Source of the DNA: Macrostomum lignano
Taxonomy: Eukaryota
Assembly: GCA_002269645.1 (NCBI GenBank)
Contig: NIVC01005091.1
Span: forward strand, 1 to 26,484
Length of the DNA stretch: 26,484 nt
Direction of reading: 5' to 3'
Positions within the stretch are counted from its first letter, which is position 1, and every line of letters begins with the position of its first letter. Below are positions 11,062 to 26,484 of the stretch, in pieces. The notes beneath the pieces were generated by a model. The model did not search any database. It saw only the letters and a list, made by a program, of their open reading frames with translations, and was not told the origin of the DNA. Made by a program: the position numbers and the translations under genes.

Positions 11062-11830
11062 GAACCAAATTGGCTCAGTCGGACCCTTCGAAGAAGGGAC
11101 AGAGACATGGATTCAATACCAGGAGCGCATTGAACAGTTCTTTGTTGCCAACGACATTGCAGACGAGAAAAGGAGAGCAGTGTTGCTAAGCACGTGTGAG
11201 AAACAAACATACGAGTATTACATATCAGTTGCTCTGCAGCCTTCTGTCGCCGAATAAGCCAGCCCAAACGTCTTACGCTGACATCTGCAAAACACTGAAG
11301 GAACACTTCGACCCAAAGCCGCCAGAAATCGTTTTGCGCCATCGCTTTTACACTCGAAACCACCAGCCTGGTGAATCCATTGCCATCTTCTTGGCCGATC
11401 TCCGCAAGTTCGGCTGCAATTTCACCAACCTGAACGGAATGCTGAGGGACAGGCTCGTGCTGGGCATCAACGATGACGGAATCCCGCGGAAGCTCCTTGC
11501 TGAGAAGGAACTGACTCTAGCAAAGGCACAGTCAACTGCACAAGCCCTCGCTACGGCCGCCGAGGGCACTCAACTTGTGATGAAGGGCACCGAGCCAGAG
11601 GCTGTTCATGTCGTTCAGCAGTCGGCAGCTGCCAGACGCTGTTTCCGGTGTCTCTCACAGCGGCACCTGGCGGCCAAGTGTGCCTTCTTGAGCAAGAATG
11701 CTTCAACTGTTCCAAGCCGGGGCACACGGCAGCTGCATACAAGTCCCAGGCAGCCAGTGGTCGATGCGAGAGCCAGGTGGCGGTGTGCGAAGTCGAGTCG
11801 GAGATTGAGGAGACACACTCTCTGCACGTG
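11060..11830 (+). pseudogene. gag: Ty3/Gypsy (Mag-like) gag, frameshifted
   Basis: Typical Mag-type N-terminus (W..Y.ERIEQFFVANDI) and MLRDRLVLGI. CCHC knuckle CFRCLSQRHLAAKC at 11640-11681. A second knuckle (CFNCSKPGHTAAAY, last Cys lost) is in another frame. Frameshifts at ~11212-11224 and ~11690. Confidence 0.9.
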
Positions 11831-13721
11831 ATGGCCAAACGGAAGGGCAAGGTCCCGCCTATTGAGACGACGGTTACAATTGACGACGCACCCGTCCGTA
11901 TGAAGATTGACACAGGTGCGTCATTTTCGCTCATATCTGCCAGGACCTATCGCTCACAGCTGCTGGGGCGGCCCAAGCTCGAGCCTGCTGGCACGATGTT
12001 ACGAACGTACTCCGGCGAGCCGGTCCACGGCAGGACCCGCGTTGGCGTGCGCGCCGAGGAAACTGCCAAGGTCCTGCCACTGCTCGTGGTGGATGGCACC
12101 GGTTCAGATTTGATTGGGCGAAACTGGCTGGCCGATCTGCCCCTGGACTGGCGCGGGATCAAGCAGATGCAGTTACATCAGAGCGGTGAGCATCTGAAGA
12201 TCCGCGACCTGCTGAAGCAGTATTCCGGTGTGTTCGAGTCCGGACTCGGCCAGTACAGAGGGCAGCCGGTGCAGCTGCGACTGAAGGACGGGGCCCGGCC
12301 TCGCTTTCTGCCTTTTGCCTTTTGCCAAGGTTGAGGCACAGCTGGACAAGGAGATTGAGCAAGGTGTGCTCAAGCCCGTGAGTAGCTCTGACTATGCATC
12401 GCCTATTGTTCTGGTGCTCAACCCCGATGGATCCGTTCGCATCTGTGCCAACTTCAAGCGGACGGTGAATCTCGACGTGGAACCAGACAAGTATCCGCTG
12501 CCTCGGATTGACGAGCTATTCGCTAAGCTGGCCGGAGGGCAGAAGTTCACGAAGCTTGACCTCTCACAGGCGTATTCGCAGATGCCTCTGGATGAGGCTT
12601 CTCAGCAGATCTGCACCATAAACACGTCTAAAGGGCTGCTGCGCTACGGCTTACGTTTGGCGTGGCGCCTGCGGTCGGAATTTTTCAGAGGCACATGGAT
12701 AGCCTGCTGCAGGCCATTCCGCACGTCGAATGCTTCATTGATGACCTCATCATCACCGGGAGCGACGACGAGAGCCACCTGCGTTCACTAGAGCTGGTTC
12801 TACAGCGCCTGCAGCAGAATGGTCTGAAGTGCGGACCGAACAAGTGCAGCTTCATGCAGGAGAGCGTGAGCTATCTGGGACACCGAATCGATGCCACCGG
12901 CTTGCACCCGCTGCCAGAGAAGGTGCGGGCCATCGTGGATGCGCCAACGCCCAAGGACGAGACTCAGCTCCGCAGCTTCCTGGGGTTGGTCAACTACTAC
13001 GGAAAATTCCTGCCGAACCTGTCCACCGAGCTGGCCCCACTGCATCGTCTACTGAACCGGGACGCTGGCTGGCGCTGGGGCACCGCACAGGATGTTGCCT
13101 TCCGTAAGAGCAAAGAGCTGCTCAGCAGGGCGCCCATGCTCGCACATTTCGATGAGCGGCAGCCGCTAGTGCTGGAGTGCGACGCTTCTCCATACGGCAT
13201 CGGCGCTGTCATCAGCCATCGAATCGACGGAATCGACAGACCGATCGCCCTTGCCTCGCGCTCGCTGCACGAAGCCGAGACTAAGTACTCCCAGCTGGAG
13301 AAGGAGGCGCTGGCAGTGGTGTTCGGAGTGAAGAAGTTTCACATGTTTCTATGCGGCCGGCAGTTCACGCTGATCAGCGATCACAAGCCGCTGTTGGGGC
13401 TGCTGCATGAGTCGAAGCCGATTCCTGCCATGGCTTCCAGCAGAATCCAGCGGCGGGCGCTCACCCTGGCCGCCTACGGCTACTCCATGGTGCACAGGGC
13501 GGGCAGGTCGCTGCTGCGTGCGAATGCTCTCAGCCGTCTGCCGCTGCCAGAGAGGCCGAAGGATTCACTGGTGCTAGCGGATGTCGTGCTGCTCATGGAC
13601 ATGCTGGACGAAGGTCCAATGACGGCACGACACATTCGAGCATGGACAAGGACGGACCCCGTGCTGTCCAAGGTGTTGCGATCAGCCGAGTCCGGCCAGT
13701 GGCCGGCGAGACCGCCTCCGT

Positions 13722-13723
<2 letters not shown>
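11831..13723 (+). pseudogene. pol: Ty3/Gypsy pol (protease, RT, RNase H), frameshifted and truncated before integrase
   Basis: Protease IDTGAS (Asp at 11909). RT motifs SPIVLV, YPLPRIDELF, KLDLSQAY and FIDD (12734-12745). RNase H motifs CDASPYGIGAV, EKEALA, SDHKPL and ANALSR (normally ADALSR). Frameshifts at ~12320 and ~12655. Confidence 0.95.
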
Positions 13724-14886
<1,163 letters not shown>

Positions 14887-15842
14887 TAACACGAGTAGTT
14901 TATAGTATCGGTGGCAGACAATAAAATTTATAGTAAGGCTGTTGTCAAGCATGGTGGTGTATTTGATTATTGAAAAAACTGGACCTTCTTAGAGTTTAGC
15001 GCAGCTATTCCAGTTCTTGAAATCGTAAACAACTTGATTTATTTTGACGCTCGTAGAAATTTTATAAACAAATTAAAAAAACATTTACGCATTTAAACTT
15101 TGGTCAAGCCTTTTTCGAAAAAAATTCTGCTAACTGGGGCGGCGAAAACGCGATTAAAGCAGGTGTCAGACCAGTGTATAAACGTGCTGTGTCAGCGGGA
15201 TGAAACTTACAGTAGAAATATTGTAGTAAAATGTCTAAATAGTCTGATAAAAATTGGTTTTTGTGGGCTATTTTAGTTTCAACATGAGCAGATGCAGAGT
15301 GCAGAAATGTTGAACGCTCATCATAATTAGTCTCTGCTTTTTCGCTTTGCTAATCACGTCCGGGACCTTCAGGCGGCGTGGCTGTCCGGCCTATTGGTGC
15401 CGGGGCCGTCCACTGGGTCGTAGAACTGAGCCCTGTCTGCAATGTTGGGAAAAATTGTTTGCTATTATATTTACTAATTATACTGTATTAGTGAATAGTG
15501 ACTGTGTCCTTGATCTGACTGTCTTAAGACTCATCGATTTATCATGGCTTGTTTACCAGATTTGGGATATTACAAATGCCAAACATAACAAGAAATAGAA
15601 ATAATCTGACATGGGCATGTAGGGCATGTAAAGCGGATGGCTGCTGCACTGGCAGATAGCGCCAATCCTGGAGGCCGGCTGTGGCTGCAGAACGCATTGG
15701 CAAAATGGGAAGCTCTCAGCTTTTGTCATCAATTCTCAATATTTCACCTTCTGAACATCCGAATCGCAAATCGAACAAATCTAAGTTTTGCTCGAGCTGA
15801 GCTCATGAGTTTATTGAGCTAGCTTTTATGAAGTGCTACCTC

Positions 15843-16235
15843 GCTCACTCACTCACTCACTCACTCACTCACTCACTCACTCACTCACTCACTCACTCAC
15901 TCACTCACTCACTCACTCACTCACTCACTCACTCACTCACTCACTCACTCACTCACTCACTCACTCACTCACTCACTCACTCACTCACTCACTCACTCAC
16001 TCACTCACTCACTCACTCACTCACTCACTCACTCACTCACTCACTCATTCACTCACTCACCCACACTCATTCACTCACTAACTCACTCACTCACTCACTT
16101 ACTCACCCACTCACTCACTCACTCACTCACTCACTCACTCACTCACTTACCCACTCACTCACTCACTCACTCACTCACTCACTCACTCACTCACCCACTC
16201 ACTCACTCACTCACTCACTCACTCACTCACTCACT
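15843..16235. repeat. (ACTC)n microsatellite, ~390 bp
   Basis: Read directly. The left half is perfect and the right half has scattered variants. Confidence 0.97.
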
Positions 16236-16653: not shown

Positions 16654-16899
16654 TCAATTTTGAAGCTGTGCATATGTATGGAGATAGATTTTCCTACACA
16701 TCTCGTGCTTTGTTTTTAAATTGTAGACATCCGAAAAGGTGCAGCTAGTTTCTAGCGGCTTGCTTGTAACCAAGGTTAAGAAAGAACAATCTAAATCCCC
16801 ACGCTGAGTCCCCAAACCTGGTCCGTACGGCTCCTCAATCCGGTAGTTCGTCTTCAAGTTCAGTTCGTCCCTCAGGCGCCTGGTCTGCACAGCGTAGAC
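16654..16899 (-). CDS. Exon o: end of TM helix and cytoplasmic tail (3' boundary uncertain)
   Basis: Acceptor CTGCAG at 16900-16901, then VYAVQTRRLRDELNLKTNYRIEEPYG. Basic residues follow the TM, as expected on the cytoplasmic side. Confidence 0.7.
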   Translation of the reverse strand, partial: VYAVQTRRLRDELNLKTNYRIEEPYGPGLGTQRGDLDCSFLTLVTSKPLETSCTFSDVYNLKTKHEMCRKIYLHTYAQLQN

Positions 16900-19800
16900 C
16901 TGCAGGTTTTAGGAGGGTTTGTGCGGTTTTAGCGGACTTCCCATATCACCCAGTTGCTTAGGAAATAGCTTTTGCGAGCTTCTTCATGTAACTAAAACAA
17001 GGATTTTAGTTGTCCCCGACTGCTACTTAGTCGGTATAAGCAAAGAAGCACAGCTAATGGGCACAAGCGCTAGTGCAGTATTGCATACAGCAGCATTCAA
17101 GTCGCTTACGATGATAAAGATGACGAGGACAAGCAGGAAAAGTCCGCCAATTACTGCAACCAGAATGATCAGGATGGTGTAATCCTGCGACACGGCCTCT
17201 GTGCCACCGCTTGTGGCTGTGCCGGCACTGGCTGCCGCAGTCGTGGCCGCTGCCCGAGTGGTGGATTCGACGGCCGTTGTCGTTGAGCTGGTACTGGTGA
17301 GGCTTGTGACGGCTGTGAAATTAGGGAACCATTCGAAATTATTTCATATGGTATATACATGTCAAAGGCACAAAAAGCGCTTGCAATTTAAGCTGCTTTG
17401 CTCACCCGAAGATCCAATGTTATCGATGATGACACCACCCAGATCTGTTGCTTTCAAACCTTTTGTGAGAAGCTCGATAATAGAAGCTGCTGTGTTTGTA
17501 GACGTGTCTCGAACCACAAGGTTTCCACTGATGACAACACTTCCCGACTTAAACTGTAAGTTCACTGCGTTTTGCAGTTCACCATAAAGCGAAGTTGACC
17601 TGGATGATTTCATAACGGTCTCGAAGGCGTAGTTAGCCAGCTGCTTGTAGCGCCAACTGTTCGGGTCTGCATAGTCATCGAACCACTGCAAATTTGAAAA
17701 GCGGAACGAGAACGGCACGGTCTTGACGTTCTTAAACACAGGCTGGTAGTTGGACGGACAGATGCAAGACGTCGTTGTGGGCGCAACAGTCGTAGTTGTA
17801 GTCGGAGTTGTAGTAGTTGTAGTCGTCGTCGTTGTTGTTGTGGTGCTCGTAGTCGGAGTAGTTGTGGTAGTAGTCGGAGTAGTTGTGGTAGTAGTCGGAG
17901 TAGTTGTGGTAGTAGTCGGAGTAGTTGTGGTAGTAGTCGGAGTAGTTGTGGTAGTAGTCGGAGTAGTTGTGGTAGTAGTCGGAGTAGTTGTGGTAGTAGT
18001 CGGAGTGGTTGTGGTAGTAGTCGGAGTAGTTGTGGTAGTAGTCGGAGTGGTTGTGGTAGTAGTCGGAGTGGTTGTGGTAGTAGTCGGAGTGGTTGTGGTA
18101 GTAGTTGGAGTGGTTGTGGTAGTAGTCGGAGTGGTTGTGGTAGTAGTCGGAGTGGTTGTGGTAGTAGTCGGAGTGGTTGTGGTAGTAATCGGAGTGGTTG
18201 TGGTAGTAGTCAGAGTGGTTGTGGTAGTAGTCGGAGTGGTTTTGGTAGTCGTCGGAGTGGTTGTCGTAGTAGTTGGAGTGGTTATTGATGTAGTCGTTGT
18301 CAAACACACTGCTGGAATTGTCGTAAAGCAGCCGTTGATGATGAGGTACATCTGGAAATTTGTGCTCGTCGCTGAAGCTGTCTTAAGCGTGCGCGGCAAA
18401 ATGATGAACTGAGCTACTGGAAAGCCGATGTCAAAGCACAGATCCGCCGCAGTGTCTGAGGATACCAAGCTAGCAAGATTTTGGAAAGGTGCCGCATAGA
18501 ACTGCTTGTATCGAATCGTAGCCTCTCTAACGTTTCCGGAGAGACACAACTAGAATTATGGCAGGGTAGAGCATTTACCGTCAGACTGATGCGTTCTCTG
18601 CACTGCTTAGAGAAATAAAGCTAAAAAATTTAGAGCTTACCCTGTCAATATAAATTCCACTACGACAGTTATTAATGGTAAGATCCACAGTCAAATATCC
18701 ATCCGTTCCGGTGCGAATATTGAAGCCAGTAGCATCACTGAAGCTGGTAGCCCCCGTGATATAGTCCATTGGCAGGAGCAATGGGTTCGAAAGAGCGTTT
18801 ACCATTGGACAGACTGAATAAACAATTTGTTTTTAGCCGTTAGTGTTTAGAATAAACAAACAATTTTGTCTTAACATAAAGGATAGTGCATTTGACTTAC
18901 ACGTGGTTCCCACAGTCGTAACGGTCGTGGGGTTTTGGCAGTAGATGAACTGCTAGTCATCGTGCTTGACGTGGTTGTGCTAGTGCTTGTCGTCGTGCTG
19001 GTTGTTGGAGTGCATCCCGGAATCGGCATGAAGCAGCCATACACCGACAGGAAGAAGTTGTAAGTGCTAGATCCGGTGGCTGTAGAAGACTTCAGTTCCT
19101 TCGGTGCGATGATGATAGTGCTCACGTTGAAGTTCAGGTCGTAGCACAGCAGTCCTGGACCGTCTTGAATAATAGTTGTGGACTGAACCAGTGGCAGGTA
19201 TGACTGAGATGCCGATGTCTGGTAGATGAGGTCAGCTCTCTTTACATTGCCGCCGATAAGGCAAACCTAAAAAGTGCAAGGATTTTTCGGTTACAGATTG
19301 AATCGTTACGCGACTCTAATGACCAATTAAATAAATGCTACAGAGCCTAATTGTACCTGTGTGATGTATTCTGGTCTGCGGCAGTTGTTGGATGTCAAAT
19401 CGATGAAAAGTCCTTCGCCGGGTGCTCTAGACATTGTGTAGCCCAATACAGGAGAGAATGTTGCTCCACTGATGGCCCAGGAAGGCAGCAACGATGTATC
19501 AGCGATCGCATCGACAGCAGGACAAACTAAAAGTAATATTCAAGTTCAGTATACGATAACAAAAAGATTGAAAGAAATTAAGCCAAAGTACGAGCTACTT
19601 ACATGTTGGCTTTGGTGTAGTAGTTGCTGTCGTAGTTGAACTTGTTGTTGTCGATGTGGTGGAAGCTGTTGAAGTAGTTGGTGTTGTTGTTGCAGTTGAC
19701 TTTGTTGTCTCAGTTGTGGAAGCAACTGGTGTTGTAGTTGTAGAAGATGTTGGCAGTGTAGTAGTTTTCGTTGTTGGTGTAGTTGTAGTTGTAGAACTTG

Positions 19801-22800
19801 TTGATGTTGACAATGTGCTTGAAGTTGTAGTAGAGGTCGAAGTTTTAGTTGTTGGAGATGTAGTCGATGTGCTGGTTGTCGGAGTCGTCGTTGTTGAGGT
19901 CGTCGTTGTGGGTGTTGTAGTCGTTGTACTCGTTGTCGTTGAAGTCGTGGTTGAAGTTGTCGTTGGAGTAGTAGTTGTGGTGGTAGTCGTTGGAGTCGTG
20001 AGGCAGGCGCCTGTTAGCGGCGTGAAGCAGGCATCGACTCTAACAAAGAAATTGAACATACTGTCGGTCGAGAACGATTTGAGTCGCAGAGGCACAATTG
20101 CTATTTTAGCTACAGTCTCTTTGTTGAGAACTGTGTAGCACCACGGACTCGTAGTGTCAACTGAGATGCTCGAAGCAGACAAATCAGGCGAGTACTTTTC
20201 AGTGCTTAATCTTGCAAACAGCAAGTTGGCTTCTCGCACGTTACCAATCAGACAAATCTGAAAGAATAAGCGGACATTCCAGTGTATGGAAACATGTGAG
20301 GAAAATATAGTTCAAGACACGTCATAAATGACATACAAACGCGTACCCTATCAACGACTATTGGCGGCCGACATGAGTTTACAGTCAGATCAATCTCAAG
20401 GCTTCCGTTCTTCAGAGGAAGTCTGTAGCCATAGAATGGGTCGTATTCTCCACCAGTTACAGCGAATGAAGGAATCAAGTTGGACTGGTAGAAGCCGTCA
20501 ATAGCGCAAGACGTTGTGGTTTCCAGTGTTGTGGTCAGAGTAGTTCTTGTTGTCGTCGATGTCGTAGTGCTGGTCGTTGGAGTCGTCGTAGTGGTAGTTG
20601 TAGTCGGTGTAGTTGTAGTAGTGCTTGTTGTAACAGTAGTCGGCGTGGTCGGCGTTGTAGTAGTTGTAGTCGTACTGGTAGTGCTGGTGCTGGTCGTTGT
20701 GGTCGGCGTGGTCAGACACGTGGAGTTAAGAGGATTGATGCAGGCCATGAGAGACACGAAGAACTGGTACTCGGTTGAGTTGTAGCCAGGCTTTGTAGCT
20801 TGAGGAACAATCATTAGTTCAGAGGTGAGTCTATTAAGATCATAGCACAGAGGATCTCCAGTTGAAGAAGTCTTTCCTGGCGTGTTGAAGTCGGGTACCA
20901 GTTTGTCGCTGGTTGGCTCTCGGATCAAGATTTGTGCATTGAACACGTTTCCAGCGATGCACAGCTGCAATCACGATCGTTGACGATTAGTTAGATTAAT
21001 GTTATATACGAGCGTAGTTACTAAGCGAGTAAGCATATCCATATCGGAAACAGGAATACAACATCTAAACTTTACCCTTGAAATCACAGCAGCGGGTCGG
21101 CAGCCAAAGACAGTAAGATCGATTTTCAATGCGGCTTTGAGGGGAAGAATGTATCCAAAAAGCTCTCTGTATGTGCCACCAGTGACTGCGAATGATGGCA
21201 GCAAGTCCGAACGACTGAAGGCATCAACGAGGCATGCTGAAAATCAAGTAGTCAGTTTGCACAAATGATTAATCGCATCTTGTAAGCTGGGTTTCCAAAG
21301 AAACTGGAGAACAAAAACTAAAAAGTTTCTTTTTAAACTTTGTTTTAACTTACAAGTAGTAGTAGTCGGGGTTGTTATTGTAGTTGTTGGAGTCGTCGTC
21401 ACAGTCGTGGTGGGCGTAGTTGTAGTTGTAGTAGTGGTAGGTGTAGTTGTTGTAGTGGAAGTCGAAGAGGTGCTTGTCGATGTTGGCGTTGTTGTAGTTG
21501 TAGATGACGTTGGTAGAGTAGTTGGCGTTGTGGTTGTCGATGATGTCGTTGTGGTTGTTGTAGGAGTTGTTGTTGGCGTTGTAGTTGTTGAAGTTGTGGT
21601 CGGTGTTGTTGTGCTTGTTGTTGTGCTTGTAGTGGGAGTTGTGGGAGTTGTGGTAGTAGTAGTGGCTGTAGTCGTTGTGGTTGTGGTTGTTGGTGTTGTT
21701 TGGCATGTGTCGTTAAGCGGCAAGAAGCAAGCTTGTATAGTCAAGAAAAACTGATAGTTCACTGCAGGAGCTTGAAGAGCAGTAGGCTTGACTTGGAGCT
21801 CGACCATGTCGATGTTCAAATTGTAGCATAGTTGAGAACTACTAGTTTCATAGTTTATTGAGTCGGCGAAGATAACCGGATAGTCGGAATATGTTCTTCG
21901 ATAAACCACGTTTGATCTTTTCACATTTCCTCCTATCAAGCAAACCTGAAATGTTCCAAGCGTTTTAAACGGAGTATCTGAAGACAAAATTCTCGTAGTC
22001 TATAGTAAGCACACTGCTTAGCTGTTAAAACTACTACATCATTCGTAGAAAAGACTTTTGACTCAGAAACAAAAAATATTCAAATAGTTTTACGTGATAA
22101 ACTGTTTAGGTTTGCTCTCAACACTAACTGTCGAACAAAAACTATAAGAGTTTAACTATAGTTTAACTAAACTATAAAAGTAGTACTTTGTACTAATTGC
22201 TTAATAGTACTACAAGGGTGTTCAAAACGTCTTAGGACGTTTTCTCATTACTGTTGGGCTGCGCCCTTCCAGTGCTTGTGTACTTTGTCTTGTTTTCATT
22301 TTTTCAGGCCGCCCCGCCCCGTCCCCCGTCTCGCGCCCGGGCCAGGGTTTGTGAGAGGCGTAAGCCTCAACCCTGGCCTCGCCCTTTCTGCACCCAGCCC
22401 CGGCCCAACTTCTGTCCAATCTGGTTGCTGACCCTACCCCCTCCCTCTTTGCCCGCCTCACCCTAGGGCTGCTCGTATTGGCTGGCTGGCTGATAAGCCG
22501 GCTGGGCCCCAGGGTTTGGCTCGCCCTCTCCATTCTGCCCTACCCCTCCCCTTTTTGTGTAAATATTATGTAAAGGCTAGCCCTGAGCGGGCTGCGCTCC
22601 ACGCTTTTCGTTCTTTCTGATTTTCCGTTCTTCGGCGTACCTCTGCCATTTGCGTACCAATAACTGCTTCGTGCCAATAACTGCTTTTTACCAATAAACG
22701 TTCCGCCAATTCTAACGCTTCGTTAATAAGTCGATACATCAAGAAGAGGTGAGCGCGTGCTTTCTTCTTTCGGGTTGCCGCGTAGGGCCGGATCTGCAGG

Positions 22801-25800
22801 GACCGGGACCGGTGAACACTCGCTGATCCCAGGGTCGTCGGAGTAGCCAGGGAAGGGCTGGGACCGGGGTGTCTCAGGCGGGAGGGCCCGAACCATGACC
22901 CGTCCAGTGGCCATTAGGCCGAGACACAACATTACTCTTTTTAACAGTCAGCAATAGTACTCCTTGCTTGGCACATCTTTCGTTACTCTGTAATATACGT
23001 ACCTGATAAACAGTCAAGGCTCCCCGGCATCCACGAGCTGTGAGGTCAATCGCTATGTATCCACCGCTGGAAACTGGAATGTTCCAGCCAGTAGCGCCGT
23101 CAAACGTCGCACCAGTGATCGTAAATTGCGGCAAGTACACAGGACTCGATAAACCATTAACGACGGGACAAACTGTAATGACAACGTGAAAATGTCTTAT
23201 TTATTAAGTTATTAATACACTACTTCTCGAATACAGCTCTCAATAACAATTGGGCACTTAAAAGAATCATGTAACGATCTTATTTACTTGTTGTGGGCAC
23301 TGTTGTAGTACTTGTACTTGTCAGAGTAGTTGTAGTGGTAGTGGTCGACGTTGTCGGTGTAGTTGTTGTGGTTGTTGTGGGTGTTGTAGTTGTTGTAGTG
23401 GTCGTTGTTGTCGGAGTTGTCAAGCAGGTATTATTCAAAGGTGTGAAGCAAGCCTTGATTGTGATGTAAGCTCGAAATGCCGTGTCGGAGCTGAAAGCGC
23501 TCTTCAACTGTTGCGGTGAGATGCGCACACCAGTGAGCATCATTCCTGTAGGCGGAGTGAAGCACAACGGATCGGAAACCCCAGTAGCTGACTGGCTTGC
23601 AGACGGAAGATTCGGACTGAATGGTCCTCCGTATGTAGTTTGATACAGGATGTAGGAACTCTGAATGTTTCCTAGTAGACAAATCTGCAAAAACCGTTGT
23701 GTGGTACACAATGTGTATTGTCTAGTGGTATGTCTGAAACTTATTAGCAAAGTGTCACGTTGTAACGAAATTCCTGCTCAATACTCACGCTCTCAACAGT
23801 AATTGGCATGCGGCAGCCAAACACGGAGATGTCCACTGTCATTGCGTAGGTACCACCAGTTCGAATCATGTACCCTGAAACAGTGTAATTGGCTCCACTG
23901 ACTGCAAATGATGGAATAAAGCGCTCATCCGACAAGCCATCAACTGCACATGAAGGCGTAGTTGTAGTAGCAGTGGTCGTTGTGCTCGTCGTCGTGCTCG
24001 TCGTTGATGTCGACGTGGTGGGTGTAGTTGTCGCTGTTGATGTTGTCGTCGGTGTAGTCGCAGTCGTTGTTGTGCTCGTCGAAGTGGTTGGTGTTGAAGT
24101 TGTCGTTGAGGTAGTCGTCGTAGTACACGATACTGGCAGAGGAGTGAAACAGGCCTCGATGGAAAGGAAAAACTGATACAACGAATCGCCTGAGGCTGCG
24201 CTTTTAAACTCTTTCGGAACAATTCTCAGCTCGGAAATGGGAAGCATTGGGTAGTAGCACAGCGGTGTAGCAGTGTCACTTGTATTGTACAGCGACTGCT
24301 CGAAGAAGTCCCAGTAGAGGGTGGAGCCTTGACGGATGATAAGATCAGCTCGTTTTACATTACCGCCGAACAGACAAATCTAAAACGGAACGCATCTAAT
24401 TTTAGCATTTGAAATTGCTATTTTATTTAAATATCAAGAAAAGAACAAGTTACATACCCTATTAATTAGGATCGGTGTGCGGCAACCGGATACAGAAATG
24501 TCCACATAGACGCCTTCCACTGAGCCTCTGGGTACATTATATCCTGTTAACGGATTATAACTAGGAGCATTGATAGAAGAACTGGGAATCAAGACGCCGT
24601 TGAGTCCGTTCACCAAACAGGATGTTGTTGTCGACGGAGTGGTTGTAGTAGTGCTAGTTGCTGTTGTGGTCGATGTCGGCGTTGTGCTAGTAGTTGTGGG
24701 AGTTGTTGTTGTGGATTTAGTAGTCGACGTTGTAGAAGTCGTCGTTGTCGACGTCGTTACAGGTTGCGTTTGACAGGCCGTAGTTAGAGGCGCGAAACAG
24801 CCCTCAAGGCTCAGGAAGAATGAATAATTCGTTTCCAGCGACGAGCTGTTCAGTAGTGCGACTGGCGTGATTGCAATGCTAGATATGTTTGCCCCGAGAG
24901 TTATGCAAAGAGGAGTCAACGAAGACGAGACAGATACCAAATTGGATTCCAAGACAAGATCGAACCGACCGGTCGGATAAGTCGTCTGGGTAGACACCGT
25001 TACCTGCCTTACATTTCCTGTCACACAAACTCTCGTTAGGTATGTAGGAACAGGATTACATCCTCCAGCAGTCAAATCTATGATAAGATCTCGTCTCGGA
25101 CTCACTGGCATCTCGTATCGACCAGTTACATAAGTGGCGCCGGTAATGGCCCAATCAGGTATGTACTTTCTATCACTAAGGCCATTGAGTGCTGGACAAA
25201 TTGTAGGCTTGACAGTAGTTGTAGACGTTGTTGTCGTTGACGTTGTCGTAGGAGTTGTAGTTGTGCTGGTAGTTGTAGGTGTTGTAGTGGTTGTTGAAGT
25301 AGTCGTCGGTGTTGTGGTAGTGCTACTAGTTGTAGTAGGCGTTGTAGTTGTGCTTGTAGTACTCGAAGTTGGAGTGGTTGAAGTGGTAGATGTAGATGTT
25401 GAAGTGGAGGTTGTTGGTGCGACTGTGGTAGACGTCGTCGTTGGAGTTGTAGTGGTAGTAGGAGTAGTCGATGTCGATGTTGTTGGTGTAGTTGTGGTTG
25501 ACGTCGTCGTGGGTCGTTGTCGTTGACGTCGTCGTGGGTGTCGTTGTTGTGGTGGTGGTTGTTGTAGTCGTAGTAGTGAGACAGCTGGCATTTAAGGCAG
25601 TGAAGCAGCCGTAGATATTCATATAAAATGTGAAATCTGATCCTGTTCCAGGAGTCATTGTCTGTGGCATCAGCTGCAAACCGGTGATGTCTCTGTTCAC
25701 TTGAAGACAAAGCAGCCCGTTTCCACCCGTAACGGATGCAGGGAAAAGCACAAGCCTAGAATCCAGATTGTTCTGTACTGAAATCAGAGTCGTTTGCACA

Positions 25801-26484
25801 TTTCCACCGAGACAGACGCTAAAAATTCGAATTGGCGCACGACATCCGCGAGCAGAGATATCCACCACAATAGAACCAAGTGGTTGAACAACGAATGCTC
25901 CTGCTCGATTAATAGATGCCCCAGAAATGTCTTGATCTGGTATAAACTGCGCGCTTGTCATTCCGTCGACCACAGGACAGTCTAAAAATCATATTTTTAC
26001 AGACAAATGATGATTATAACAAAAAACAATAAAATGAAACGAAAGGTTAGATTTCTATTACTACTAATTCTTACAGGTCGTAGGTGTAGTTGTAGTAGTA
26101 GAAGTTGTTGTCGGTGTCGTCGGAGTAGTGCTTGTCGTTGTGCTGGGTGTCGTTGAAGTAGTTGAAGGCGTGGTTGTAGCTGTACTGGTTGTTGTAGGAG
26201 TTGTAGGGGTTGTTGTTGGTTCTTTTGTTGTTGTTGATGTTGTTGTGCTTGTTGTGCTTGAAGTTGGTGTTGTCGTCGGTGTAGTGGTTGTTGGGGTCGA
26301 TGTCGTCGGTGTTGTTGTGGTTGATGTTGTTGTTGAGGTTGTGGGAGTAGTTGTAGTTGACGTTGTTGATGTCGTCGTAGTCGTTGTAAGACAGGACGCG
26401 TTTAAGTTGCTGAAGCAGCCATATATCGATAAGAAGAAGTAGTAGGAACTTGCTGTCGTCTTGTAAAGCTGCGGTTCTACCTGA
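16654..26484 (-). CDS. Large type I membrane mucin-like protein (5'-partial): tandem six-Cys domains alternating with Thr/Pro tracts, SEA domain, TM helix, cytoplasmic tail
   Basis: 15 exons joined by 14 GT-AG introns with compatible phases, apart from two local frameshifts (~25513 and ~18930). Exons are listed separately below. Confidence 0.9.
17110..17312 (-). CDS. Exon n: Ser/Thr/Ala stalk plus transmembrane helix (frame absent from the ORF track)
   Basis: Hand translation gives AVTSLTSTSSTTTAVESTTRAAATT...QDYTILIILVAVIGGLFLLVLVIFII. Phase-0 donor GTAAGC at 17109. Confidence 0.9.
17406..18549 (-). CDS. Exon m: C-half of D9, long (T6P)n tract, SEA domain
   Basis: SEA-like segment PFSFRFSNLQWFDDYADPNSWRYKQL...FKSGSVVI. 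Phase-1 donor GTGAGC at 17405. Confidence 0.9.
17851..18270. repeat. 21-bp coding tandem repeat (~20 units) encoding TTTTTTP
   Basis: AGT(A/G)GTTGTGGTAGTAGTCGG is repeated with very few substitutions. Confidence 0.9.
18641..18813 (-). CDS. Exon l: N-half of D9
   Basis: Reads CPMVNAL...VDLTINNCR. Donor AGG|GTAAGC at 18640. Confidence 0.85.
18901..19266 (-). CDS. Exon k: C-half of D8 plus short Thr/Ser tract; apparent 1-nt frameshift near its end
   Basis: Starts VCLIGGNVKRADL. Donor GTAAGT at 18900. Confidence 0.8.
19357..19526 (-). CDS. Exon j: N-half of D8 (absent from the ORF track)
   Basis: Hand translation gives CPAVDAIADTSLLPSWAISGATFSPVLGYTMSRAPGEGLFIDLTSNNCRRPEYITQ. Donor GTACAA at 19356. 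Confidence 0.85.
19603..20257 (-). CDS. Exon i: C-half of D7 plus Thr tract
   Basis: Starts ICLIGNV. Phase-1 donor GTAAGT at 19602. Confidence 0.85.
20347..20964 (-). CDS. Exon h: C-half of D6, Thr tract, N-half of D7
   Basis: Starts LCIAGNV. Donor AGG|GTACGC at 20346. 206 codons. Confidence 0.85.
21076..21236 (-). CDS. Exon g: N-half of D6
   Basis: Reads CLVDAF...IDLTVFGCRP. Phase-0 donor GTAAAG at 21075. Confidence 0.85.
21354..21945 (-). CDS. Exon f: C-half of D5 plus Thr tract
   Basis: Starts VCLIGGNV. Phase-1 donor GTAAGT at 21353. Confidence 0.85.
22252..22931. mobile_element. Solo LTR (680 bp) inside the intron between exons e and f
   Basis: TGTTG...CAACA termini with a 4-bp TTAC duplication on both sides. 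GC-rich relative to the intron. AATAAA at 22693 and repeated CCAATAA on the plus strand suggest + orientation. Confidence 0.8.
23003..23172 (-). CDS. Exon e: N-half of D5
   Basis: Reads CPVVNGL...IDLTARGCR. Donor CAG|GTACGT at 23002. Confidence 0.85.
23288..23684 (-). CDS. Exon d: C-half of D4 plus Thr tract
   Basis: Starts ICLLGNI. Phase-1 donor GTAAAT at 23287. Confidence 0.85.
23789..24379 (-). CDS. Exon c: C-half of D3, Thr tract, N-half of D4
   Basis: Starts ICLFGGNV after TTTTAG. Donor GTGAGT at 23788. 197 codons. Confidence 0.85.
24458..25981 (-). CDS. Exon b: domains D1 and D2, N-half of D3, Thr tracts; one frameshift
   Basis: Acceptor at 25982-25983 and phase-0 donor GTATGT at 24457. 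Joins ORFs 25326-25973 and 24434-25591. Confidence 0.85.
26075..26484 (-). CDS. Mucin-like gene exon a (5'-partial): C-half of domain D0 plus Thr tract
   Basis: Reads YYFFLSIYGCFSNLNASC then T-rich. Phase-1 donor GTAAGA at 26074. Confidence 0.85.

What the first reader, a model, noticed from the sequence alone, without database searches (positions are those of the whole stretch)
18310..25981. Unassigned six-cysteine repeat domain, possibly a remote discoidin/F5-8-like beta-sandwich
Seen: nine complete copies share the pattern C-x-(V/I)(D/N)(G/A)...(I/L)P-x-(F/W)-x-(I/V)(T/S)G...G(Y/W/F)...(I/V)D(L/I)(T/S)...CR...(V/I/L)C(L/I/V)xG(G)NV...LC(Y/F/I/L)...(I/L)xP...(Y/F)xF(F/Y)(L/V)x(I/V)x(A/G)CF...C. 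Loops between these motifs differ strongly, so the copies are old or diversifying, unlike the near-identical Thr repeats. Inference: the VDL...V...G core and the terminal 'RIxP...LxIxGC' recall the F5/8 type C (galactose-binding-like) fold. I cannot name the family, so it may be undescribed.
Basis: partly seen in the sequence, partly recalled or inferred. Interest (0 to 1): 0.75.

Follow-up and report, generated by a model that had tools for sequence, protein, structure and literature searches.

The report
Discoidin-like six-cysteine domains in flatworm mucin
The repeats are real: a flatworm (Macrostomum lignano) cell-surface mucin gene in which sugar-coated threonine-rich stretches alternate with compact six-cysteine domains that no domain library names but that are very distant relatives of the discoidin (F5/8 type C) binding domain.

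Summary
Observation confirmed. On the minus strand, 25979-18304, there are nine complete copies (133-143 aa, 6 Cys, 23-41% identical) plus a cut tenth. They alternate with Thr/Ser/Pro linkers in a spliced gene that ends in a SEA domain, a transmembrane helix and a short tail.

The DNA is 97.4% identical to a Macrostomum lignano contig, which carries five more copies upstream.

No Pfam family or PDB sequence matches any copy. An AlphaFold model (pLDDT 86.8) is an eight-stranded sandwich. Its best PDB matches are discoidin/F5/8 type C and CBM32 domains.

A scan of 1.84 billion proteins found only Macrostomum paralogues and two-cysteine relatives, in a chiton "mucin-2-like" protein and in unidentified eukaryotic contigs. 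Those relatives also sit between Thr-rich stretches. The model of one relative hits neuropilin b1, factor V/VIII and DDR2.

A family profile aligns end to end with factor VIII C2 (P 1e-4 to 1.6e-5; permuted decoys reach far lower scores). Cys1 and Cys5 fall on the canonical discoidin disulfide.

The ligand is unknown. Moderately interesting: a new variant of a known kind.

The parts
26391..26477 (-). D0: C-terminal end of a tenth domain copy, cut by the window edge (..YYFFLSIYGCFSNLNASC)
   Evidence: HMM positions 109-140, E=1.2e-5; translation
25581..25979 (-). D1, complete six-Cys domain with no intron
   Evidence: HMM 1-140, 150 bits; coordinates
25199..25580 (-). Thr/Ser/Pro linker between D1 and D2. 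The reading frame shifts here: the window lacks an 'AC' near 25515 that the M. lignano contig L001 has.
24773..25198 (-). D2, complete domain with no intron
   Evidence: HMM 1-140, 159 bits
24125..24619 (-). D3: N-half 24619-24458, phase-0 GT..AG intron 24457-24380, C-half 24379-24125
23424..23950 (-). D4: N-half 23950-23789, intron 23788-23685, C-half 23684-23424. Nearly identical to PAA49141.1 (P0005).
21703..23170 (-). D5: N-half 23170-23003, unusually long intron 23002-21946 (1057 nt, with a GC-rich insert at about 22246-22950), C-half 21945-21703
20716..21234 (-). D6: N-half 21234-21076, intron 21075-20965, C-half 20964-20716
20003..20508 (-). D7: N-half 20508-20347, intron 20346-20258, C-half 20257-20003
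19012..19524 (-). D8: N-half 19524-19357, intron 19356-19267, C-half 19266-19012
18304..18811 (-). D9: N-half 18811-18641, intron 18640-18550, C-half 18549-18304
17770..18303 (-). Long Thr-rich (PTS) stalk. It includes the 21-nt TTTTTTP tandem array at 17849-18283 (20.7 copies, 96% matches).
17406..17769 (-). SEA domain carrying the G|SVVI self-cleavage-type motif (..LQFKSGSVVISGNLVVRD..)
   Evidence: Pfam PF01390, E=2.2e-9, 37.8 bits, above the cut-off of 26.4; 55% identical to the SEA domain of paralogue P0016; exon end read
17110..17312 (-). Exon after a 93-nt intron (17405-17313): Ser/Thr/Ala-rich juxtamembrane stretch and the transmembrane helix ILIILVAVIGGLFLLVLVIFII (17175-17110)
16654..16899 (-). 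Cytoplasmic-tail exon (VYAVQTRRLRDELNLKTNYRIEE..). Its start is fixed by the acceptor CAG and by similarity to the P0016 tail (VYAVYSRRMRSDLKQK..). Its 3' end is uncertain.

Best explanation
The region is the 3' two-thirds of a Macrostomum lignano gene for a membrane-tethered mucin.

Shown:
- The extracellular part is a string in which Thr/Ser/Pro stretches alternate with at least 14 folded domains of about 140 aa. Ten lie in the window and five more lie upstream in the sister contig.
- It ends in a long TTTTTTP stalk, a SEA domain with a GSVVI motif, one transmembrane helix and a short cytoplasmic tail.

Shown by predicted structure and by profile comparison:
- Each domain is a very divergent discoidin (F5/8 type C, galactose-binding-domain-like) beta-sandwich.
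- Cys1 and Cys5 are the ancestral pair that ties the N- and C-termini together in discoidin domains. Distant relatives keep only these two.
- Cys2, 3, 4 and 6 are found only in the Macrostomum copies.

Inferred:
- Cys2, 3, 4 and 6 form two more disulfides that lock the loop after the IDL strand and the C-terminal tail.
- The Thr/Ser/Pro stretches are heavily O-glycosylated.
- Because the two ends of a discoidin domain lie side by side, each domain hangs off the glycosylated string like a bead and presents the loops at its far pole.
- The array acts as a multivalent, low-affinity binding surface within the apical glycocalyx. The most likely ligands are glycans (the mucin's own, a neighbour's or microbial), by analogy with discoidin I and CBM32.
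- The differing loops give different copies different preferences.
- The SEA domain lets the ectodomain be shed under force.
For: Gene structure:
- The frames are continuous across domain and Thr-rich parts.
- Seven introns are canonical, phase 0 and at the same codon.
- The SEA domain matches Pfam at E=2.2e-9. The TM helix and tail match paralogue P0016.

Organism:
- 3.2 kb is 97.4% identical to NIVC01003964.1 of GCA_002269645.1. Five more copies lie upstream there.

The gene looks functional:
- pN/pS between the two copies of the locus is 0.31 within the domains (15 non-synonymous and 16 synonymous changes).
- Copies D4, D6, D8 and D9 are 44-54% identical to the positionally matching copies of paralogue P0016, in the same order, against 23-41% to their neighbours in the same gene. 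Each position has therefore kept its own sequence.

Fold:
- AF2 model with pLDDT 86.8 and pTM 0.81.
- Foldseek top hits are muskelin discoidin (E=6e-5), CBM32, NRP1 b1 (TM 0.65), a Bacteroides F5/8 type C domain and DDR1.

Homology chain:
- The Macrostomum profile finds chiton and unidentified-eukaryote relatives at E=1.7e-27 to 1.4e-9 in 1.84e9 proteins.
- hhalign between the two groups gives probability 98.2% and E=2.9e-14.
- The model of relative P0012 hits NRP1 b1, FV, FVIII C2, DDR2 and CASPR2, with 52 hits at E<=1e-3.
- The whole-family profile against FVIII C2 gives P=1e-4 and 1.6e-5 end to end. Decoys reach at most 17.1 against the real 31.9. Cys1 pairs with the first Cys of the FVIII C2 domain and Cys5 with its last.
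- One relative (P0014) gives a sub-threshold Pfam F5_F8_type_C hit, E=1.1e-4.

Shared architecture:
- The chiton protein and the unidentified-eukaryote gene on L002 also alternate this domain with Thr/Pro-rich stretches.
Against: - No ligand, glycosylation or expression data exist for this gene. Every functional statement is an inference.
- Outside the Cys residues and the strand cores, almost nothing in the loops is conserved among copies. There is therefore no sign of one shared binding site. That fits diversified binding, but it fits no binding at all equally well.
- The Macrostomum copies have lost about 10-17 residues of the region that forms the first ligand-binding spike in factor VIII C2 (alignments).
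- Sequence similarity to true F5/8 type C domains is below every curated threshold. The hhalign probability is only 57%.
- The window copy has a 2-bp frameshift in the D1-D2 linker, so this particular allele may be broken or mis-assembled.
Confidence: 0.6

Rival explanations
1. The fold assignment is the same, but there is no ligand. The domains would be inert, disulfide-locked knots that interrupt the glycosylated rods. They would set spacing, stiffness or protease resistance, or give weak self-association, as proposed for the CysD domains of gel-forming mucins.
For: Conservation is concentrated in the Cys residues and the strand cores, and the loops differ freely in sequence and length. The first spike region is shortened relative to factor VIII C2. 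Four extra cysteines point to selection for stability.
Against: Each array position keeps its own sequence between paralogous genes (44-54% against 23-41%), and pN/pS is 0.31. That suggests constraint on more than the core. Nearly all characterised discoidin and CBM32 domains bind something (established knowledge).
Confidence: 0.25
2. The domain is not related to discoidin domains. It would be an independent six-cysteine beta-sandwich that converges on a common jelly-roll topology, and AlphaFold and Foldseek merely report the nearest common fold.
For: There is no Pfam or PDB sequence hit. Foldseek E-values are modest (6e-5) with TM 0.5-0.66 and 10-18% identity. The Macrostomum profile alone does not align significantly with FVIII C2 (P=0.27).
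Against: The whole-family profile aligns end to end with FVIII C2, far above 60 decoys. The terminal Cys pair falls on the canonical disulfide. Two independent models give the same family of hits. One relative almost reaches the Pfam F5_F8_type_C threshold.
Confidence: 0.08
3. The locus in the window is a decaying duplicate, one of several homeologous copies in a partly polyploid genome, and encodes no functional protein.
For: The window has a 2-bp deletion that shifts the frame in the D1-D2 linker relative to the sister contig. It also has a 1-kb intron with a GC-rich insert in D5, and a retroelement fragment and microsatellites nearby.
Against: All nine domains are open. All seven in-domain splice sites are canonical and in phase. 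The SEA domain, TM helix and tail are intact. pN/pS is 0.31. The single frameshift lies in a low-complexity ACx tract, where assembly errors are common, and the sister contig itself shows many 1-nt gaps.
Confidence: 0.07

Closest known systems
F5/8 type C (discoidin) domain, Pfam PF00754: factor V/VIII C1-C2, neuropilin b1/b2, DDR1/2, lactadherin, retinoschisin, muskelin, bacterial CBM32
   Same: It has the same predicted eight-stranded jelly-roll sandwich of about 140 aa. A Cys at the very start and a Cys at the end of the last strand align with the canonical disulfide pair. The N-terminal C-x-x-x-G-(M/L)...I-P-x-x-x-I-(T/S)-G-A segment resembles C-x-x-P-L-G-M...I-x-D-x-Q-I-T-A-S-S. IDL aligns with WLQVDL, and I-x-P...x-A-C with R-I-x-P...L-G-C. 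It is extracellular.
   Different: It falls below Pfam's threshold in all nine copies and in the consensus. The Macrostomum form has four additional invariant cysteines. The region of the first spike is shortened, and the conserved Trp and TQG motifs are missing. It occurs in arrays of 14 or more copies embedded in mucin-type Thr-rich sequence, an architecture I did not find described for discoidin domains.
Two-cysteine relatives: chiton Liolophura sinensis XP_064614628.1 'mucin-2-like' (P0008) and unnamed genes on unidentified eukaryotic contigs from environmental or sequencing-run assemblies (P0012-P0015, P0021-P0024; locus L002)
   Same: They are homologous over the full domain length (hhalign 98.2%, E=2.9e-14). 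They share the invariant G-N-V after the fourth strand and the I-x-P...A-C ending. The domain alternates with Thr/Pro-rich mucin-like stretches.
   Different: Only Cys1 and Cys5 are present, and the loop before the conserved Trp is longer (..P-S-D-L-R-P..G-W..). In L002 many copies occupy a single open stretch and a few are split. One group (P0013) combines the domain with a VWC domain and His-rich linkers rather than with SEA and a TM helix.
SEA-domain transmembrane mucins (vertebrate MUC1, MUC13, MUC16, MUC3/12/17)
   Same: It has the same Thr/Ser/Pro tandem-repeat ectodomain, a juxtamembrane SEA domain with a G-S-V-V-(V/I) motif, a single TM helix and a short cytoplasmic tail.
   Different: The vertebrate proteins have no discoidin-like domains between their PTS blocks. 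There is no detectable sequence relation outside the SEA domain.
CysD domains of gel-forming mucins (MUC2, MUC5AC, MUC5B)
   Same: They have the same position in the architecture: small Cys-rich globular domains that interrupt PTS regions.
   Different: The sequence and cysteine pattern are unrelated (CysD has 10 Cys and a WxxW motif, from established knowledge). There is no Pfam hit to any mucin domain. Here the carrier is a membrane mucin, not a VWD-polymerising secreted one.
Macrostomum lignano paralogues: A0A1I8HA14 'Membrane-associated protein' (P0016), A0A1I8FZS0 (P0004), A0A1I8IX78 (P0006), and PAA49141.1 (P0005, the same locus)
   Same: They share the six-Cys domain and the PTS-SEA-TM architecture. 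P0016 also has an N-terminal signal peptide. The order of copies is collinear with the window gene.
   Different: They are separate loci (the SEA domain is 55% identical). The public gene models are fragmented or read Thr-rich DNA in the wrong frame, and their automatic names (ZP, PKD, DUF3707) do not reflect this domain.

Membership tests
F5/8 type C / discoidin domain (Pfam PF00754) | Match to the family HMM at or above the curated gathering score (28.2 bits) | tested here: not met
   None of the nine copies or three family consensus sequences hit it at E<=10. The 11 relatives scanned do not either, except P0014 at 22.7 bits, E=1.1e-4, below the cut-off.
F5/8 type C / discoidin domain (Pfam PF00754) | Eight-stranded distorted jelly-roll beta-sandwich (galactose-binding-domain-like fold) | tested here: met
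   On predicted structures only. The D5 model has pLDDT 86.8 and eight strands. Its best PDB matches are discoidin and CBM32 domains at E=6e-5 to 1e-3, TM up to 0.66. The model of relative P0012 gives 52 hits at E<=1e-3, led by neuropilin b1, FV, FVIII and DDR2.
F5/8 type C / discoidin domain (Pfam PF00754) | Cysteines at the first residue and at the end of the last strand, forming the disulfide that joins the N- and C-termini | tested here: met
   Cys1 and Cys5 are invariant in all copies and are the only Cys kept in distant relatives. hhalign pairs them with the first and last Cys of FVIII C2. The bond itself is not testable here.
F5/8 type C / discoidin domain (Pfam PF00754) | Statistically supported sequence-profile similarity to bona fide members | tested here: inconclusive
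   Against the FVIII C2 orthologue profile, the whole family scores 31.9, with P=1e-4 (local) and 1.6e-5 (global), probability 57%. Sixty permuted decoys averaged 11.5 (sd 2.2, max 17.1). The Macrostomum copies alone give P=0.27.
F5/8 type C / discoidin domain (Pfam PF00754) | Ligand binding through the loops (spikes) at the pole opposite the termini | not testable with these tools
   These loops vary in sequence and length among copies. No binding data exist.
SEA-domain transmembrane mucin | Long Thr/Ser/Pro-rich tandem-repeat (PTS) regions | tested here: met
   There are Thr-rich linkers between all copies and a 21-nt TTTTTTP array of 20.7 copies. O-glycosylation is inferred.
SEA-domain transmembrane mucin | Juxtamembrane SEA domain with a G|S-V-V-V-type cleavage motif | tested here: met
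   PF01390 at E=2.2e-9, 37.8 bits, above the cut-off of 26.4. The motif GSVVI is read in the sequence. Cleavage itself was not tested.
SEA-domain transmembrane mucin | Single transmembrane helix, a cytoplasmic tail and an N-terminal signal peptide | tested here: inconclusive
   A 22-residue hydrophobic helix and a tail exon are present and match paralogue P0016. The 5' end of the gene lies outside the window, so the signal peptide is seen only in paralogue P0016.
Mucin CysD domain | About 110 aa with 10 conserved Cys and a WxxW motif; matches the Pfam mucin CysD model | tested here: not met
   The domain has six Cys, no WxxW and no Pfam hit.

The most novel reading that the evidence does not exclude
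The array is a germline-encoded panel of diversified lectin-like discoidin domains displayed on a sheddable membrane mucin. Each position would have its own glycan or microbial specificity. The mucin would either cross-link its own glycocalyx or act as a decoy that captures bacteria. In the adhesive organs it might instead be the docking surface for the worm's secreted glue. Together with the chiton and unidentified-eukaryote relatives, it would define a previously unrecognised, spiralian-wide class of 'discoidin mucins', functionally parallel to CysD-containing vertebrate mucins.
Probability: 0.2. Interest if true: 0.65.

Novelty: new variant of a known kind. Interest (0 to 1): 0.45.

Why it matters
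Mucin biology rests almost entirely on vertebrate proteins, where the only folded modules known inside PTS regions are CysD domains. This locus shows a different solution: arrays of a discoidin-type binding fold threaded through a membrane mucin. It occurs in at least one flatworm, and related forms occur in a mollusc and an unidentified eukaryote.

The finding gives a name and a fold to a set of flatworm proteins that now carry empty or misleading automatic names. It supplies an HMM-ready family that Pfam does not cover.

It also gives a tractable laboratory animal (M. lignano, with RNAi and transgenesis) in which to test what folded domains inside a mucin do. It does not overturn anything, because the fold and the mucin framework are both known.

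Tried and rejected
- Pfam-A on all nine copies, three consensus sequences and 11 relatives gave only noise: Hanta_Gn-H at E=0.005, Hint, Flavi_glycoprot and several DUFs, all far below their cut-offs.
- PDB sequence-profile searches with the Macrostomum profile and with the relatives' profile found nothing meaningful.
- The word-indexed protein search with the nine-copy profile found one 81-aa fragment. With the relatives' profile it found five proteins.
- hhalign of the mixed alignment against a single FVIII C2 sequence was not significant (P=0.17). A signal appeared only with a broader family alignment and an orthologue profile.
- P0010, a bacterial type-IX-secretion repeat protein, was listed at E=8e-13. 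I rejected it as repeat-inflated noise, because each stretch scores 7 bits or less over 45 columns.
- CysD, MAM, CUB and lectin families were considered and dropped for lack of any hit.
- Rfam and tRNA scans of the window found nothing.
- Literature searches for the gene id, for Macrostomum mucins and for discoidin-containing SEA mucins found nothing relevant.
- The contrast between strand and loop conservation is weak (0.52 against 0.49 mean column identity), so I do not use it as evidence.
- Disulfide pairing could not be read, because model coordinates are not exposed.

Full report
**What is in the sequence**

The window is eukaryotic DNA with microsatellites, a retroelement fragment and spliced genes. 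The finding lies on the minus strand. Six-frame translation shows long open stretches in which a cysteine-containing domain runs directly into Thr/Ser/Pro-rich sequence and then into the next domain.

An HMM built from the nine copies, run over all six frames of the window, hits only the minus strand. It finds nine complete copies between 25979 and 18304, plus the last 30 residues of a tenth copy at the window edge (26477-26391).

- Each copy is 133-143 aa with exactly six Cys.
- Eleven columns are invariant: six Cys, P14, D42, G64, N65 and P112.
- Pairwise identity is 23-41%.
- In leave-one-out tests every copy scores 97-141 bits against the other eight, while 200 shuffles of it never exceed 8.2 bits.

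**Gene structure**

D1 and D2 have no intron. D3-D9 are each interrupted at the same place, one codon before Cys3, by a phase-0 intron with GT and AG ends. Six of these introns are 78-111 nt and one is 1057 nt.

After D9 the gene continues as follows:
- A 178-aa Thr-rich stalk, which contains a 21-nt TTTTTTP array of 20.7 copies at 96% identity.
- A SEA domain (Pfam PF01390, E=2.2e-9) with a GSVVI motif of the self-cleaving type.
- A 93-nt intron.
- An exon encoding a 22-residue transmembrane helix.
- A tail exon beginning VYAVQTRRLRDELNLK.

The 5' end lies beyond the window.

**Organism and relatives**

A scan of 1.84 billion representative proteins with the nine-copy profile found only 15 proteins at E<=0.001.
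- The strongest are Macrostomum lignano proteins.
  - One, PAA49141.1, is almost identical to the D3-D4 part of the window.
  - Its contig (NIVC01003964.1, assembly GCA_002269645.1) is 97.4% identical to window 26204-22991. The window is therefore the same locus in another haplotype, homeologue or assembly.
  - That contig carries five more copies upstream, so the gene has at least 14-15 domains.
- Paralogue A0A1I8HA14 (P0016) has a signal peptide, the same domains, PTS, SEA, TM helix and tail.
- Window copies D4, D6, D8 and D9 are 44-54% identical to the positionally matching P0016 copies, in the same order. The array is older than the gene duplication, and each position has kept its own sequence.
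- Between the window and the sister contig, the domains show 15 non-synonymous and 16 synonymous differences, giving pN/pS of 0.31.
- One defect exists. The window lacks an AC dinucleotide at about 25515 in the D1-D2 Thr linker, which shifts the frame. In such a tract this may be an assembly error.

**What the domain is**

No Pfam-A family matches any copy or the family consensus at E<=10. No PDB sequence matches the profile.

Predicted structure of D5:
- AlphaFold2 on D5, with the nine copies as the alignment, gives a confident model: pLDDT 86.8, pTM 0.81, eight strands.
- The D5 sequence used carried two extra intron-derived residues at the exon junction, which I corrected later. This affects one loop only.
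- Foldseek against the PDB ranks the muskelin discoidin domain first (E=6e-5). CBM32 modules of a clostridial GH89, neuropilin-1 b1 (TM 0.65), a Bacteroides F5/8 type C domain, CBM29 and DDR1 follow. More remote galactose-binding-like folds (SUN, APC10, IFT25) come after those.

Distant relatives:
- The non-Macrostomum hits are a chiton protein named mucin-2-like (seven copies) and unnamed proteins from unidentified eukaryotic contigs.
- These align with the flatworm domain over its whole length (hhalign 98.2%, E=2.9e-14) but keep only Cys1 and Cys5.
- A model of one of them (P0012, pLDDT 78.6) hits almost only metazoan F5/8 type C domains: neuropilin b1 at E=7.7e-6, then factor V, factor VIII C1/C2, DDR2 and CASPR2.

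Direct profile comparison:
- I compared a 30-sequence family alignment with a profile of factor VIII C2 orthologues.
- hhalign aligns the two from first to last residue, with score 31.9, P=1e-4 (local) and 1.6e-5 (global).
- Sixty column-permuted decoys averaged 11.5 (sd 2.2) with a maximum of 17.1. The reversed profile scored 10.1.
- Cys1 and Cys5 fall on the two cysteines that close the discoidin domain.
- One relative (P0014) nearly reaches the Pfam F5_F8_type_C threshold (22.7 against 28.2 bits).

I conclude that the domain is a very divergent member of the discoidin / galactose-binding-like superfamily. It is not a member of PF00754 as that family is curated.

**How it probably works**

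Shown: this is a membrane mucin architecture in which folded domains alternate with PTS.

Inferred from what is established for discoidin domains:
- The two chain ends lie together, tied by Cys1-Cys5. Each domain therefore projects sideways from the glycosylated string and exposes the loops at its far pole, which is where discoidin and CBM32 domains bind glycans, lipids, collagen or peptides.
- The four Macrostomum-specific cysteines probably form two more disulfides that rigidify the domain in an exposed marine or brackish surface coat.
- My preferred reading is a multivalent, low-affinity binding array within the glycocalyx, most likely for glycans. The SEA domain would allow shedding under force.

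The main rival is that the domains are inert spacers. The loops show no shared conserved site, and the first spike region is shortened. Against this rival, position-specific conservation between paralogues argues for more than a scaffold. Neither reading can be decided from sequence alone.

**Comparison with what is known, and novelty**

The fold (discoidin) and the framework (SEA transmembrane mucin) are both known. What is new:
- A six-cysteine subfamily that no library used here covers.
- Its use in arrays of 14 or more copies inside PTS sequence, the place held by CysD domains in vertebrate gel-forming mucins.

The chiton protein and the gene on locus L002 also interleave the two-cysteine form with Thr/Pro-rich stretches. 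L002 has at least nine domain copies plus PTS exons. I found no paper describing any of this.

I rate it a new variant of a known kind, of moderate interest.

Noticed in passing
window 11196-13723 (+): Fragment of an LTR-retrotransposon-type pol region. It holds a CCHC zinc knuckle (weak hit), an aspartic protease, a reverse transcriptase and an RNase H, in three shifted frames. It stops abruptly at a (GATA)n microsatellite, and no integrase is seen in the window.
   Followed up: partly
window 13722-14886; 1659-3563; 15840-16235; 5-686: Very large microsatellites: (GATA)291 at 99% identity, three (TATC)n blocks interleaved with a 22-nt satellite (TAGACACAGATCCCTAGCCTGT), and (CTCA)99. They create long spurious ORFs (SIYL.., SLTH..).
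   Followed up: partly
window about 25515 (-): A 2-bp (AC) gap relative to M. lignano contig NIVC01003964.1 shifts the reading frame inside the D1-D2 Thr-rich linker. It is either a real allele-specific frameshift or an assembly error. The sister contig in turn has many 1-nt gaps inside domains.
   Followed up: partly
window 21946-23002 (intron of D5): This intron is 1057 nt, while the six equivalent introns are 78-111 nt. It contains a GC-rich block (61-65% GC, about 22246-22950). The sister contig stops aligning 12 nt into this intron. It is possibly an allele-specific insertion, but I found no repeat ends or matches.
   Followed up: partly
window 5273-6814 (-): A 513-aa open reading frame with acidic and Gln-rich stretches and only a sub-threshold Pex19 hit (E=0.007). 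It may be an exon of an unrelated gene.
   Followed up: no
window 4115-4615 (-) / 4387-4572: A Pro/Ala-rich ORF built on a 60-nt tandem repeat (3.2 copies) in a GC-rich island with strong GC skew. It has no family hit.
   Followed up: no
D0, D1, D4, D5, D6 (e.g. window 25592-25584, 23435-23427): An N-x-S/T sequon sits directly before Cys6 (..LNASC, ..LNNTC, ..LNDTC, ..LNSTC) in five of the ten copies. This suggests a recurrent N-glycan at the domain-linker junction.
   Followed up: no
L002 (ENA ERZ25069853, ctg28616l, 3904-24410): A contig from an unidentified eukaryote (GC 36%) carries one large gene with at least nine two-cysteine discoidin-like domain exons spaced 1-3 kb apart, plus exons of Thr/Pro-rich repeats fused to a domain. 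This is the same mucin-like logic in another lineage.
   Followed up: partly
P0002, P0003, P0004, P0007, P0016 (UniProt M. lignano models): Public gene models of the paralogues read parts of the Thr-rich DNA in the wrong frame (long N/H/Y/D-rich stretches), skip half-domains, and carry automatic names (ZP, PKD, DUF3707, Membrane-associated) unrelated to the real domain content.
   Followed up: partly
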